A DNA stretch of 54,596 nucleotides, taken from NCBI RefSeq assembly GCF_000002075.1, contig NW_004797328.1, forward strand, positions 131,540-186,135, written 5' to 3'. The notes under the pieces are model-generated. The model made no database searches, was not told where the DNA came from, and saw nothing but the letters and a program-made list of their open reading frames with translations. The translations under genes were made by a program, and so were the position numbers. Below, piece after piece: positions 1,388-23,762 of the stretch (position 1 is the first letter of the stretch; each line of letters begins with the position of its first letter). The DNA is from Aplysia californica (Eukaryota).

Positions 1388-2434
1388 ATGAAGCTTCCAC
1401 ATGTTCTGTTCATCCCTTTTACAATTTGCGTCGTTGTCAGGTGTAGTTTTTCAGAAGACAACCTTAATGTAAGCAACACATATTCTGATGAAGGGAACAG
1501 CATTCCAGCTCCAGCTCCAGCTCCAGCCCCAGCCCCAGCCCCAGCCCCAGCCCCATCCCTAGCCCCAGCTTATAAATACGGGACCCAAAAGGAAAACTCT
1601 CTCGTCACTTCCTACGAATCTCACCGGCCTTCGAAACGCTTGGGGCCTAAAATGGTGTTTGAGTGGGAGGCTGGAGTAACTGAAGGACTAGATTTTCATA
1701 AGGACTATTGTTTTCAAGGCTGTTATGATAGCGATGATATCGCTGAGGATGAATGGTCTACGTTTTGTTTCCCTTACTGCTCATGCTCCAAGTCGTGTTA
1801 TCTCTATGGCACTTGTTGCCCTTTTGATTATCAGCCCTGGGCTCAACAGATTTTTGATGAGGCTGATAGAAACAGTGAAAACACAACGACAATAGATCGA
1901 CCTGAAGGGACAATTTATGAAAATCACGACGATAGACATTCAGATTTTGTACGCCTTGAGTGTAGAGAATTCGATTATAATGATAAGTACCGCTTCATCT
2001 TCTCAGAATCAAAATGTCCGGAGAGTGAATCAAACAGTACGCTGCGGAACCTATGTGAGGCGAGCCCTTGTGAAAGTCTACAGGGCTGTACCCCTATCTC
2101 ACTCAAATCCACAGGGATTGTGTATAGAAATGTCTACTGTCTACTGTGCAATGTAAATGGCTACACGGGCCGTGTAGAGACGGCGAGCGATGGGAATGGG
2201 TCCGGGTATATCCTGTCGCTCAACAACGGCACGACGGTATATTATTACAAGTGGTCTGTTCAGATTTCTTGTAAACATTACCAGACGTTATACACCATCA
2301 TGTCAGAGGAAGAACTGTTTCTTGAGTCACGTAAGTTAGACCAGTTGTGTGATATCCGAATCTCCCCACCCTCGGAAAAAGTTGTACCACCTCCACAGAA
2401 GTGTGACCCCGACTTCAACCTCCTCACGGCCCTC
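1388..2434 (+). CDS. GPCR ectodomain exon copy 1 (signal peptide, Pro-Ala repeat, SMB-like Cys-rich domain); 3' end lost in gap 2435-2534
   Basis: ATG at 1388 (MKLPHVLFIPFTICVVVRC, hydrophobic signal-like) is at the same position in all four copies. Contains CFPYCSCSKSCYLYGTCC and VYRNVYCLLCN motifs. Core nearly identical to copies 2 and 3. Confidence 0.8.
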
Positions 2435-2544
2435 NNNNNNNNNNNNNNNNNNNNNNNNNNNNNNNNNNNNNNNNNNNNNNNNNNNNNNNNNNNNNNNNNN
2501 NNNNNNNNNNNNNNNNNNNNNNNNNNNNNNNNNNATATATTATA

Positions 2545-3801
2545 CGACATGTGACGGTCGCATACCTTTCCAAAGTCTTGGCGACTTGCCACTGTCATTC
2601 CATTTCCCAAACTAAACAAAGACCACAAACGGCCATCCAACTACAGACCAATCGCCGAAACGAGCGGTCTGTGCAAACTAATGTTAAAAATATACTATTA
2701 AAGTTAATGATTAACTAGCAACTCGTGTGATTTCTGGAGACGACGGGCTCGCTGAGCGGTTTCCAGTGCGGAATCAGGAAAACTCGATCTATCCTATCTG
2801 ACTCTCTGTCTTGCATCACCTCACTTACAAAATACACCTTTTATAACCCAATATAGTTATGTTGCAACAAAAAGTACATTCTTTGACATGAACAGGGACA
2901 TGTATCGTGTCAGTATTGGCGGGCATCTGAGGAAACTAGCGAAGGAATCCTTGTCCCTTCTTTAGGGATCAACGACAAACACTATCCAACAGACTAACTT
3001 TAAAAATAAAGTTAAAAAACTACACCTCCAGTCTGTGAGAGACACATTGTAAGAAACAAATAAACAATAAACTTCACAACATCGTGTCCAAACTGCGTCC
3101 ACGAAAACCTTCGGGCCTCTCCAGAAGAGACGAAGTCAATTTGACTCGATTGCGTATCGGACACACCTCCCTGACACATAAACCTCCTTCAGGGAGCTGA
3201 ATAATTGTTCAGTGTCGGATGCGACACAGATTTCTCCATTAGACACATCTTAACACTCTCCGTACCTCATGTTTTACTATCGTATCCCTACGACGTGGGG
3301 AACTCTGTGCCACCACTTTCAAAGAGGAAATTTATTTGTTAATCTGATCCGTACACTTTGCTAAGCAGTCTGTCGAAATGATTTTTTTTGTTTTGTTGGA
3401 AATACTGAAAGTTTCAAAGAGATCTTCGTACTAGAAATATTCTAGAATGTGAAGAAAACAACCTCGGGGATACAAAATGACACCAGGGCGTTTAAAAGAA
3501 TGTCCAGGTTTCGGAGAGACCCGAAGGGAATATTTTTAATGCAAAAAACTGCAAGATCTGTTCTCCGTCTTTGGTCCCAACAGAATTCTCGAGGCCTTTA
3601 CAATAAATTGTAAATACTGGTGTTTTAATCTGTTCTAAAGAAAACTTGTCATTTTTAGATTGAATATTTTATCCAACATTTTAAACATTTTAATCGAATC
3701 ATTGACCTAAACCAAGCCGTGCTTTGAACTGTTCATGCAACTTACTTGTGTTTTGCACTCTCATATGACCTTATGCAGTTGCAAGCGCCGTAAAACTCTT
3801 A
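2545..3801 (+). mobile_element. Decayed, internally deleted I/Nimb-clade LINE (paralog of 20340-21405)
   Basis: IPFPK..KDHKRPSNYRPIA remnant, LTRLRIGHT remnant, family 3' end atgacctta.gcagttgc.agcgccgtaaaactctta. Confidence 0.7.
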
Positions 3802-3809
3802 TTTTTAAA

Positions 3810-21662: not shown

Positions 21663-21715
<53 letters not shown>
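21609..21715 (+). repeat. (GAC)n(GAT)n microsatellite in the intron before the 7TM exon
   Basis: Seen directly; produces the spurious poly-T/poly-M start of ORF 21609. Confidence 0.95.
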
Positions 21716-21716
<1 letters not shown>

Positions 21717-21791
21717 GCTGTGGGATGCAATGTTTTGTTTTGGGGGATTTTCATACTGCAAGTTGTCTTTAGTGTTTGTTTGTATTTTCAG

Positions 21792-23762
21792 CAAGGTGGC
21801 TGTGAGAGAGCATCATGTTCCCCCGGTAAGCGCCTGGAGACCAGTGGTAACTGTGCTACAGCTGTAGACGGGATCAGAGGCCTGAGCTACGTTCTGTCAG
21901 TCACTCTGTCTCCAGACAGGAAAGTTGCTGTCTCCGAAACCCTAGTGAAACTTTTGAGCCATCTCATTCATAACAAGTTCTCTCCCATGTGTGAAGACCG
22001 CGAAGTGCACATGTATTTGACAGTTTTTGTCAATCCATCCGGGGTTCAGATTCTGAAGTCGGTCAGCTTTACGGCTTACATCATGGGCAAAATCAGTATC
22101 GCCAGAGACGAACTTGAGACGGGTATTCTGGGATTGCTGCAGGAAGCGTGGGTGGTGAATAGGACAAGCCAGGAACAACAACCGCTTGTTACCTTTAAAC
22201 CTATTGTCATGGGATACCATCTTCATCAGCGACTGAACCGTTCTAATGCAGAAGTTTACAATTATTCGTTGTCCGCGGACTTTACTAATGTTATCCAGGA
22301 GAGTGTAGGTCAACCTTTGTCTGACCCCGTTCTAGAGCCACAGGAACTACTTGAGCTGATGAATTGCCCCGAACCCGAAACAGCCGAGTTCACTGAGGAA
22401 AAAACTCTCGTTCTCAGACTTGGATTTACCGTACCAGAAATTGAACATCGGTGGCATTCGAAGGACACATTTATAGACCTCACAAACACAATCTCATGCC
22501 CCTTTGTCAGTGTGAGTATACTTGAGAACTTTACTCGCGAGTCAGAGAGCGATGAAATCATTTTCCACGTTCCTTATAAAAACGGGGTGGTCGATGTGTC
22601 TTACAGCGCGGAAAATATGGCGTACGTGGACAAAAATCTTCTACACGTTTGTATTGACAGCTACAAGCAAATCCATTTTCCTGTTATGAGAGCTGTGAAA
22701 AGTTTACTGGAGACAGCCCAGCACTATTTCGAAATTACGTGTTTTAGCGTGTCGACGGCGTGTCTCATGGTGACGGTGTTCACATACTGTCTGTTCCCAA
22801 GCCTCCGCTCCGTCCCAGGCAAGAATAACATCGGTCTGTGTGTCTCTCTCGCTCTTGCTCAGATCTTTCTCCTCGTCTCTGTAGAGCATGGAAATCGTGG
22901 AGAGATTCCTCCTGCCGCCTGCTTGACCAATGCCGTTCTCTTACACTTAGCCTGGCTGTCTGCCTTCGCCTGGATGTGTGTGTGCTGTGTCCACATGTAC
23001 CGAGTGTTCCGCTCGTCTGCTGGTCCCCAACGGTCTAATCCTCGCTCGGACAACAGGCGTCATCTGCGGTACTGTTTGGGGGCCTATGGCTGTGCCATTT
23101 TGATAGTCCTACTAACGGTTGTGCTCAACTTAGCTTTGTCTCGGGGAGAGTCTTTCGGCTACGACAAGCACTTGTGTTTCTTAGATACATCCAGATCCAT
23201 CCTGACTTTTCTCCTGTCAATGCTGGTACCGATGTGTGTTATGATTCTCTGTAACGCTTTCCTGTTCTCGTTAACCGTTTGGGAAATCGCTCGAGTGGCC
23301 CGCCTGGGTCAACAACAATGTAGCACCCGAGAGAGACAGGGGGTCATGACTTACGTCAAACTGTCCACTCTGTCCGGTGTCTTCTGGGCTTTGGCTATCC
23401 TTACCGCCCAACTTAACATCACAGTCCTCAATTTCGTGGTGTCGTCGTTGATAGCTCTTCAAGGTGTTTACATTTTCCTTTCCTTCATTGTCAACCGTCG
23501 GGTTGGTTTGCTCTATGAGGGACTGATGAACCGCAACAACACGGCCAAAACCAACGAGCCCACGAATTCTACCAAGGACAGAGATAAGTATCGACCTTCC
23601 ACTGCCTCCGGACGTTCGACTAAGTCCGTGGGTGAGGAGGCGGGAAACATCTACAGCGTGTCTCTACAGGTCAGCGGGTCGAATGACGTCACACAGAACA
23701 CCGCCGTCAGAAGGACAAGTGTGATTGACACCTCTCCTCATACACTGGTGCAGCGGCTTTGA
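21792..23762 (+). CDS. Family B (Methuselah-like / adhesion-type, 7tm_2) GPCR C-terminal exon: membrane-proximal ectodomain, 7TM and tail (656 aa)
   Basis: Acceptor tgtattttcAG|CAAGGT (phase 0). Seven hydrophobic helices from YFEITCFSVS. The TYCLFPSLRSVPGKNN loop 1, C..NAVLLHLAWLSAFAWM (TM3) and ALQGVYIFLSFI (TM7) motifs are typical of Mth-like family-B receptors. No obvious GPS cleavage motif. Joined to copy 3 it gives about 1077 aa. Confidence 0.9.
   Translation, partial: QGGCERASCSPGKRLETSGNCATAVDGIRGLSYVLSVTLSPDRKVAVSETLVKLLSHLIHNKFSPMCEDREVHMYLTVFVNPSGVQILKSVSFTAYIMGKISIARDELETGILGLLQEAWVVNRTSQEQQPLVTFKPIVMGYHLHQRLNRSNAEVYNYSLSADFTNVIQESVGQPLSDPVLEPQELLELMNCPEPETAEFTEEKTLVLRLGFTVPEIEHRWHSKDTFIDLTNTISCPFVSVSILENFTRESESDEIIFHVPYKNGVVDVSYSAENMAYVDKNLLHVCIDSYKQIHFPVMRAVKSLLETAQHYFEITCFSVSTACLMVTVFTYCLFPSLRSVPGKNNIGLCVSLALAQIFLLVSVEHGNRGEIPPAACLTNAVLLHLAWLSAFAWMCVCCVHMYRVFRSSAGPQRSNPRSDNRRHLRYCLGAYGCAILIVLLTVVLNLALSRGESFGYDKHLCFLDTSRSILTFLLSMLVPMCVMILCNAFLFSLTVWEIARVARLGQQQCSTRERQGVMTYVKLSTLSGVFWALAILTAQLNITVLNFVVSSLIALQGVYIFLSFIVNRRVGLLYEGLMNRNNTAKTNEPTNSTKDRDKYRPSTASGRSTKSVGEEAGNIYSVSLQVSGSNDVTQNTAVRRTSVIDTSPHTLVQRL

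What the first reader, a model, noticed from the sequence alone, without database searches (positions are those of the whole stretch)
1388..23762. Candidate 'variable ectodomain exon array + single constant 7TM exon' GPCR locus
Seen: four tandem, diverged exons each encode a signal peptide and Cys-rich ectodomain (ATGs at 1388, 5728, 12508, 17824), but there is only one 7TM exon (21792-23762). Both visible donors (CTG|GTGAG at 7047 and 13770) are phase 0, as is the 7TM acceptor (ttttcAG|CAA), giving a seamless ...CSNITWRDNQDL|QGGCERASCSPGK. The gaps between copies 3 and 4 are only about 200 and 164 N, too small for a 2-kb 7TM exon if sized correctly. Known: variable-first-exon/constant-exon logic is established for clustered protocadherins and UGT1A, and mutually exclusive exons for Dscam. 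I do not know of it for Methuselah-like/adhesion-type GPCRs. Inference: one locus could make several receptors with different ligand-binding ectodomains on one signalling module (chemosensory, immune or allorecognition). More copies may lie upstream of the window.
Basis: partly seen in the sequence, partly recalled or inferred. Interest (0 to 1): 0.92.

Follow-up and report, generated by a model that had tools for sequence, protein, structure and literature searches.

The report
Snail receptors with swappable sensing ends
In the sea hare and other snails and slugs, one receptor gene keeps several alternative exons for its outer, ligand-sensing half in front of a single exon for the membrane and signalling half, a protocadherin-like layout that I could not find described for G-protein-coupled receptors.

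Summary
The window is Aplysia californica LOC118477286, a two-exon family-B (7tm_2, DUF8401/SMB) receptor. Four ectodomain exons and one 7TM exon are real. Corrections: copy 2 carries two stops (5782, 5950); copies 1 and 4 run into undersized gaps, so only copy 3 is fully visible and intact, and it is the one RefSeq joins to the 7TM exon. A hidden diverged 7TM exon is unlikely (none in the assembly, none at 82% or more in DNA-like contigs). Relatives carry the idea. Biomphalaria RefSeq LOC106075073 isoforms X2, X3 and X4 put three first exons (X3/X4 48% identical) on one identical 565-residue 7TM exon, joined at the homologous site. A gapless contig, sacoglossan by tree placement, has five intact ectodomain exons (25-69% identical, all phase-0 donors) before one 7TM exon. 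The Aplysia array is an independent, younger expansion; copies 1 and 4 stay open under purifying selection. Not shown: any read joining copy 1 or 4 to 21792, or the read support behind the RefSeq isoforms. No paper found; the scan's word search (this genome only) found no other such note.

The parts
695..1387 (+). upstream block of copy 1, homologous to the block before copies 3 and 4 but about 0.5 kb shorter; no TATA match within 250 nt of the ATG
1388..2434 (+). ectodomain exon copy 1: open for 349 codons, hydrophobic N-terminus, Pro-Ala repeat at 1505-1569, runs into an assembly gap; donor not visible
2544..3801 (.). intron relic behind copy 1, 74-80% identical to 20343-21393; homology stops about 400 nt short of where a 7TM acceptor would be, and gap-free sequence leads on to copy 2
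5728..7047 (+). ectodomain exon copy 2, a pseudo-exon: stops at 5782 (TGA) and 5950 (TAA), junction Trp lost, phase-0 donor still present
11571..12507 (+). upstream block of copy 3, about 81-84% identical to 16900-17823; TATAAAAA at 12415 (93 nt before the ATG); an AG acceptor-like site 47 nt before the ATG
12508..13770 (+). ectodomain exon copy 3: intact, 421 codons, 22 Cys, DUF8401/SMB-type, phase-0 donor; first exon of RefSeq XP_035824304.1
12950..13580 (+). homogenised core of the exon (dS 0.08-0.13 against 0.54-0.67 at both ends): gene conversion or unequal crossing-over among copies
16900..17823 (+). upstream block of copy 4 with TATAAAAA at 17729 (95 nt before the ATG)
17824..18129 (+). 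ectodomain exon copy 4: open for the 102 visible codons, runs into an assembly gap; donor not visible
21792..23762 (+). the single constant exon: second half of the junction Cys module, a ferredoxin-like (SEA-like) domain, a juxtamembrane beta domain, seven TM helices (7tm_2) and the tail; phase-0 acceptor

Best explanation
The ancestral gene has two coding exons: exon 1 (signal peptide and Cys-rich DUF8401/SMB ectodomain) and exon 2 (stalk domains and 7TM), joined in phase 0 in the middle of a small Cys hairpin. At this locus a unit of promoter, exon 1 and part of the intron was duplicated three times without exon 2. Each copy carries its own start region and ATG; whichever copy is transcribed splices its donor to the one acceptor at 21792, giving receptors with different outer halves and the same signalling half. 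Copy 3 does so (annotated), copy 2 has died, and copies 1 and/or 4 are probably live. Shown: layout, phases, single 7TM exon, selection, the same layout in two other gastropod lineages and annotated multi-first-exon isoforms in Biomphalaria. Inferred: splicing of copy 1 or 4, promoter choice as the switch, different ligands.
For: Only one 7TM exon above 48% identity in the assembly; no second contig at 82% or more over 21860-22699 in run X1. The five paralogues examined have one exon 1 per exon 2 with the same intron. Copies 1 and 4 are open, dN/dS 0.47 and 0.32; chance of staying open if neutral 0.005 and 0.11 on substitutions alone, 0.0002 and 0.014 with flank-rate frameshifts. Biomphalaria LOC106075073 X2/X3/X4 share an identical 565-aa C-terminus from the homologous junction, X3/X4 ectodomains 48% identical. 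Gapless 48.8 kb of ctg330259: five intact exons, phase-0 GTRAGT donors, one 7TM exon, no 7TM remnant. In Elysia chlorotica three ectodomain types matching that array sit on 7TM exons of the same clade. The junction splits a predicted hairpin (the exon end is disordered alone) and intact orphan exons keep its Cys and Trp. TATA at about -90 before copies 3, 4 and both Biomphalaria exons.
Against: No read or protein record joins copy 1 or 4 to the 7TM exon. Copy 2 is dead yet shows the same dN/dS (0.47), so the ratio does not prove present function. The missing 3' parts of copies 1 and 4 could be broken. I could not see the transcript support behind the RefSeq isoforms, and X2/X3 (96.6% identical) could be a mapping ambiguity. 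Copy 1 lacks the TATA match and about 0.5 kb of upstream block. Whole-gene tandem duplication is also common in the family (Aplysia C255, E. chlorotica).
Confidence: 0.68

Rival explanations
1. At this locus only copy 3 makes a receptor. Copies 1, 2 and 4 are leftovers of partial duplications, recently dead or silent, that at most trade sequence with copy 3 by gene conversion.
For: Copy 2 has two stops; only copy 3 + 7TM is on record; the exon core is homogenised (dS 0.08 against 0.6, Fisher p 9e-11); Elysia marginata has a frameshifted extra exon 1 upstream.
Against: Copy 1 is open over 349 codons with dS about 0.6 in its unconverted part (neutral chance 0.005 or less); the same layout is annotated as isoforms in Biomphalaria and kept intact at 25-69% identity on ctg330259.
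Confidence: 0.19
2. The extra exons are stand-alone genes for secreted ectodomains (read-through of the donor to a near stop and an intronic poly(A) signal), acting as decoys or carriers, not as receptor halves.
For: A stop within four codons and AATAAA follow the donors of copies 2 and 3; ectodomain-only proteins are annotated in Biomphalaria, Plakobranchus and Candidula.
Against: Orphan exons keep the donor at the homologous place and phase and end in half a Cys module; what follows the donor is not conserved; no AATAAA in the first 40 nt behind five paralogue donors; RefSeq XP_013088883.2 joins an orphan-type exon end to a 7TM exon. Secreted forms could still exist as a side product.
Confidence: 0.07
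3. Assembly artefact: these are whole-gene tandem duplicates whose other 7TM exons are hidden in undersized gaps or collapsed onto 21792-23762.
For: The 100-N gaps at 2435 and 18130 must hide at least 318 and 951 nt; the window has another gap artefact at 39654; summed contig depth in X1 is about 1.5 times higher on the exon than downstream.
Against: Behind copy 1 the intron homology runs out 400 nt before the acceptor position in gap-free sequence; X1 shows one contig with no other letters and no extra depth over 21860-22699 at an 82% threshold, and nothing like 4x; gapless contigs of other species show the same layout. Contig depth is no copy number and a filter drops records, so this is not proof.
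Confidence: 0.04
4. Same products, different switch: one untranslated leader exon upstream splices to the AG site 47 nt before each ATG, so the copies are mutually exclusive cassettes (Dscam1-like) rather than alternative first exons.
For: A pyrimidine tract and AG lie 47 nt before the ATG in copies 1-3 and slightly shifted in copy 4; joining two cassettes would shift the frame.
Against: TATA boxes lie just upstream of that site in copies 3 and 4 and at the same distance in Biomphalaria; about 0.9 kb of upstream sequence was duplicated with each exon. This variant is counted inside the best explanation; the figure is its share as the main switch.
Confidence: 0.15

Closest known systems
Clustered protocadherins, UGT1A and GCNT2 (variable first exons, constant exons; PMC1885805)
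   Same: Tandem large first exons, each with signal peptide and recognition domain, same reading frame, spliced to shared downstream coding sequence; pseudo-exons in the array; lineage-specific birth and death; gene conversion among neighbours as in Pcdh.
   Different: Here the constant part is one exon holding a whole 7TM GPCR module; arrays are small (3-5 seen) and have arisen more than once; promoter choice per cell is untested; no sequence relationship.
Chelicerate sDscam (5' cassettes by alternative promoters; PMC9258826)
   Same: Invertebrate surface receptor with tandem 5' variable cassettes on constant exons.
   Different: Ig-domain single-pass adhesion protein with about 100 isoforms and shown splicing; not a GPCR.
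Invertebrate 7tm_2 / DUF8401 (PF28443) / somatomedin-B receptors, auto-named 'GPR64-like', 'GPR126', 'adhesion GPCR L3'
   Same: Direct family: PF00002 hit, DUF8401/SMB Atlas clusters are the nearest by shape and by features; same two-exon gene across euthyneuran gastropods.
   Different: Most members seen have one exon 1 per 7TM exon; no paper on the family or on the array was found; ligand unknown.
GABA-B1a/1b and other GPCRs with alternative N-termini (from my own knowledge, not checked here)
   Same: Alternative promoters change a GPCR's N-terminus.
   Different: Those add or drop a small domain; they are not arrays of paralogous whole-ectodomain exons.

Membership tests
Family-B (secretin-like) 7TM receptors | 7tm_2 domain above the Pfam cut-off | tested here: met
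   PF00002 75 bits against cut-off 20.6, profile 6-250 of 250
DUF8401/SMB-type invertebrate receptors | Cys-rich DUF8401/SMB ectodomain | tested here: met
   Nearest Atlas clusters by shape (TM 0.47, 0.40, 0.36, all below 0.5) and by features (0.90-0.91) are DUF8401/SMB; homologues carry PF28443. The local Pfam copy lacks the model.
Adhesion GPCRs | GAIN domain with GPS motif before TM1 | tested here: not met
   No GPS hit in Pfam at E up to 1; no GAIN match stands out in fold searches of the stalk, only a generic ferredoxin-like fold at Z 4.6-6. A very divergent remnant is not excluded.
Methuselah-like GPCRs | Methuselah N-terminal ectodomain | tested here: not met
   No Methuselah_N hit; no Methuselah structure among listed fold matches
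Variable-first-exon / constant-exon clusters | Tandem paralogous first exons in one reading frame before shared constant exon(s) | tested here: met
   Four copies, phase-0 donors where visible, one 7TM exon; five on gapless ctg330259
Variable-first-exon / constant-exon clusters | Two or more variable exons are spliced to the same constant exon | tested here: inconclusive
   Annotated so in Biomphalaria LOC106075073 X2/X3/X4; in Aplysia only copy 3 is on record and reads did not name a donor
Variable-first-exon / constant-exon clusters | Each variable exon has its own promoter | tested here: inconclusive
   TATA at -93 and -95 (copies 3, 4) and -90 (both Biomphalaria exons in L020); none in copies 1, 2 or four of five ctg330259 exons; no start-site data
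Variable-first-exon / constant-exon clusters | Cell- or tissue-specific choice of variable exon | not testable with these tools
   Needs isoform-resolved expression data

The most novel reading that the evidence does not exclude
Euthyneuran gastropods have repeatedly built protocadherin-like GPCR loci in which several paralogous whole-ectodomain first exons, some only about 25% identical, share one 7TM signalling exon, and the Aplysia locus is a live example with two or three receptors.
Probability: 0.68. Interest if true: 0.92.

Novelty: new variant of a known kind. Interest (0 to 1): 0.86.

Why it matters
It extends the variable-exon / constant-exon design, known for adhesion proteins and detoxifying enzymes, to a GPCR: recognition can diversify while signalling stays fixed. 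Gene counts and annotations miss it, because the extra exons are filed as separate 'hypothetical' or SMB proteins or not at all. The best annotated example is in Biomphalaria glabrata, the schistosome host, where variable surface receptors are sought, and Aplysia allows single-neuron tests of exon choice. The natural ectodomain swaps also give a direct way to look for ligands of an orphan receptor family.

Tried and rejected
Read laying (one call, 21720-25900, four runs): a high-copy repeat at 23830-24240 filled the loose-end and joint tables, so the letters upstream of the acceptor were not shown. Raw poly(A) run X22 had no reads on the coding exon, but its coverage next door looks like 3'-end counting, so this says little. 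Fold searches against solved structures gave no clear match for either half. Ten literature searches (adhesion GPCR or Methuselah in molluscs, DUF8401, LOC106075073, first-exon GPCR arrays) found no description; subscription papers are not covered. The sister pairing of the first ctg330259 exon with the Plakobranchus orphan (94, quick tree) became unresolved when EGW08_015716 was added, so I do not claim one-to-one orthology. 'Adhesion' and 'Methuselah-like' labels were rejected. 'More copies upstream' was not found.
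Full report
What is in the window. The 7TM exon (21792-23762) matches Pfam 7tm_2 (E 7e-21) and is identical to the C-terminal 656 residues of RefSeq XP_035824304.1, LOC118477286 of Aplysia californica. The first 424 residues of that protein are copy 3 (12499-13770), so the annotation joins copy 3, not the nearer copy 4, to the acceptor; copy 4 is cut by a gap and could not have been modelled whole. 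The four ectodomain copies are real and 70-80% identical to copy 3. Copies 1 and 4 are open as far as visible (349 and 102 codons) but lose about 318 and 951 nt of exon, including the donor, to gaps drawn as 100 N. I did not fill or look up those gaps.

Is the single 7TM exon an artefact? Probably not. The assembly holds no other 7TM exon above 48% identity. Behind copy 1, 2544-3801 is 74-80% identical to the intron in front of the 7TM exon (20343-21393), and the likeness ends about 400 nt before the acceptor in gap-free sequence, so the duplicated unit was promoter, exon 1 and part of the intron. In run X1 (probably genomic) the depth over 21860-22699 equals that of a single contig with no other letters at an 82% threshold; a hidden sister exon as diverged as the exon-1 copies should have been laid there. 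Contig depth is no copy number and records are filtered, so this lowers the rival without closing it. The five Aplysia paralogues examined on scaffolds C255, C5 and C140 have one exon 1 per 7TM exon with the same phase-0 intron: the two-exon gene is ancestral and this locus is the exception in Aplysia. No copy lies in the 20 kb upstream.

Expression. The one read-laying run was largely swamped by a repeat at 23830-24240. Two likely RNA runs cover the 7TM exon thinly (depth 1-4). A contig of X13 aligns from 21792 and has 12 further letters that do not fit the intron, which fits use of this acceptor but is below the tool's 31-letter standard, and its letters were not shown. Both that alignment and a contig of X1 begin at 21792 and not at the G of 21791, which copies 2 and 3 and the intron would all supply; this could mean a donor ending in another letter, but it may be an alignment convention or chance, and I leave it unexplained.

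Are copies 1 and 4 alive? dN/dS against copy 3 is 0.47 and 0.32, lower than among the whole-gene paralogues on C255 (0.57-0.75). Dead copy 2 also gives 0.47, so the ratio records past selection. A neutral simulation gives a chance of 0.005 (copy 1) and 0.11 (copy 4) of staying open on substitutions alone, 0.0002 and 0.014 with frameshifts at the flank rate. The exon core (about 12950-13580) is homogenised, dS 0.08-0.13 against 0.54-0.67 at both ends (p 9e-11), which points to conversion among copies and may explain the gaps.

Relatives. Walking along ENA ERZ26859052 contig ctg330259 (no gaps; its genes fall among sacoglossan ones in the trees, species not given) gave five intact DUF8401 exons and then one 7TM exon in 48.8 kb, with no 7TM remnant between them and nothing in the 10 kb before the first. 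They are 25-69% identical, each has a hydrophobic N-terminus and a phase-0 GTRAGT donor at the homologous site, and the neutral chance of staying open is 0.0002 or less for the two simulated. Elysia chlorotica has ectodomains of three matching types each on its own 7TM exon of the same clade, two of them sister exons 76% identical under ectodomains of different types, so the types are interchangeable on this 7TM. Plakobranchus has an ectodomain-only model (GFN80471) three accessions from the full one (GFN80474) on a scaffold of the same length. Elysia marginata has a frameshifted extra exon 1. In Biomphalaria glabrata a gapless stretch shows two intact exon-1 copies (60% identical) before one 7TM exon; GenBank joins the near one, and RefSeq, in another assembly, joins an end 90% identical to the far one. 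Strongest of all, RefSeq LOC106075073 isoforms X2, X3 and X4 share an identical 565-residue C-terminus starting at the homologous junction, with first exons 96.6% (X2/X3) and 48% (X3/X4) identical. RefSeq isoforms normally rest on transcript alignments (my knowledge); I could not see them. In the trees the Aplysia copies form their own clade (100), so this array arose apart from the other two.

How it would work. The intron falls inside a small Cys module: exon 1 ends with a Cys and usually a Trp a few residues before the donor, and exon 2 opens with two more Cys. AlphaFold leaves the end of copy 3 disordered alone (pLDDT 32-39) but predicts a hairpin across the junction in the annotated protein (pLDDT 58-75, moderate). 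Intact orphan exons keep the Cys and Trp; dead copy 2 has lost the Trp (one annotated Biomphalaria exon also lacks it). That favours splicing over secreted stand-alone products. A TATA box sits 93 and 95 nt before the ATG of copies 3 and 4 and 90 nt before both Biomphalaria ATGs, favouring one promoter per exon, though an acceptor-like AG 47 nt before the Aplysia ATGs leaves a shared-leader model open. The N-terminal SMB-like tip and a loop near the C-terminal end of exon 1 vary most, which suits changed ligand preference (inference). Ligand and tissue are unknown.

Comparison and verdict. The protein is a family-B 7tm_2 receptor of the DUF8401/SMB type; tests for a GAIN/GPS or a Methuselah ectodomain were not met. 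The gene layout works like clustered protocadherins, UGT1A and GCNT2 (PMC1885805) and chelicerate sDscam (PMC9258826). Ten searches of the open literature found no such layout for a GPCR or any paper on this family. Verdict: a new variant of a known kind, well supported for the family, about 0.68 for this Aplysia locus making two or more receptors; interest 0.86.

Noticed in passing
window:37975-41350: 37975-39569 and 39756-41350 are 99.7% identical on either side of the gap at 39654 and hold the same exon of an ETF-ubiquinone oxidoreductase gene on the minus strand (E 6.6e-32 to 2gmh): most likely an assembly overlap, not a duplication.
   Followed up: partly
window:21792: A contig of run X1 (guessed DNA) starts exactly at the acceptor with little depth upstream, and the X13 contig also aligns from 21792 rather than 21791; unexplained.
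   Followed up: partly
window:23830-24240: Very high-copy short repeat just behind the stop codon; avoid it when laying reads.
   Followed up: no
window:24620-25900: An abundant transcript end, probably the 3' end of a minus-strand neighbour, 10-30 times deeper than the receptor exon in two RNA-like runs.
   Followed up: no
window:13771-13783 and 7048-7060: In-frame stop and AATAAA right behind the donors of copies 2 and 3; absent from the first 40 nt behind five paralogue donors, so a secreted form is possible but not a family trait.
   Followed up: partly
window:1505-1569: Copy 1 alone has an in-frame Pro-Ala repeat (about 11 units) after the signal peptide.
   Followed up: no
window:18799-19613: Inverted 79% match to 37194-38020, apparently a retrotransposon relic.
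   Followed up: no
L020 and neighbours (Biomphalaria glabrata CM074202.1, about 83.22-83.24 Mb): A cluster of these receptors with consecutive accessions (KAK7011881-890) mixing full genes, 7TM-only and ectodomain-only models; alleles differ by about 5% between strains. Worth mapping as a variable receptor cluster in the schistosome host.
   Followed up: partly
L002:2065-6755 (G000:C255:421052-425754): A broken whole-gene paralogue (stops and frameshifts in both exons) inside the C255 cluster.
   Followed up: no
L010:614-2248: Elysia chlorotica has a truncated 7TM exon fused to an ectodomain fragment (EGW08_000691) between two intact genes.
   Followed up: no
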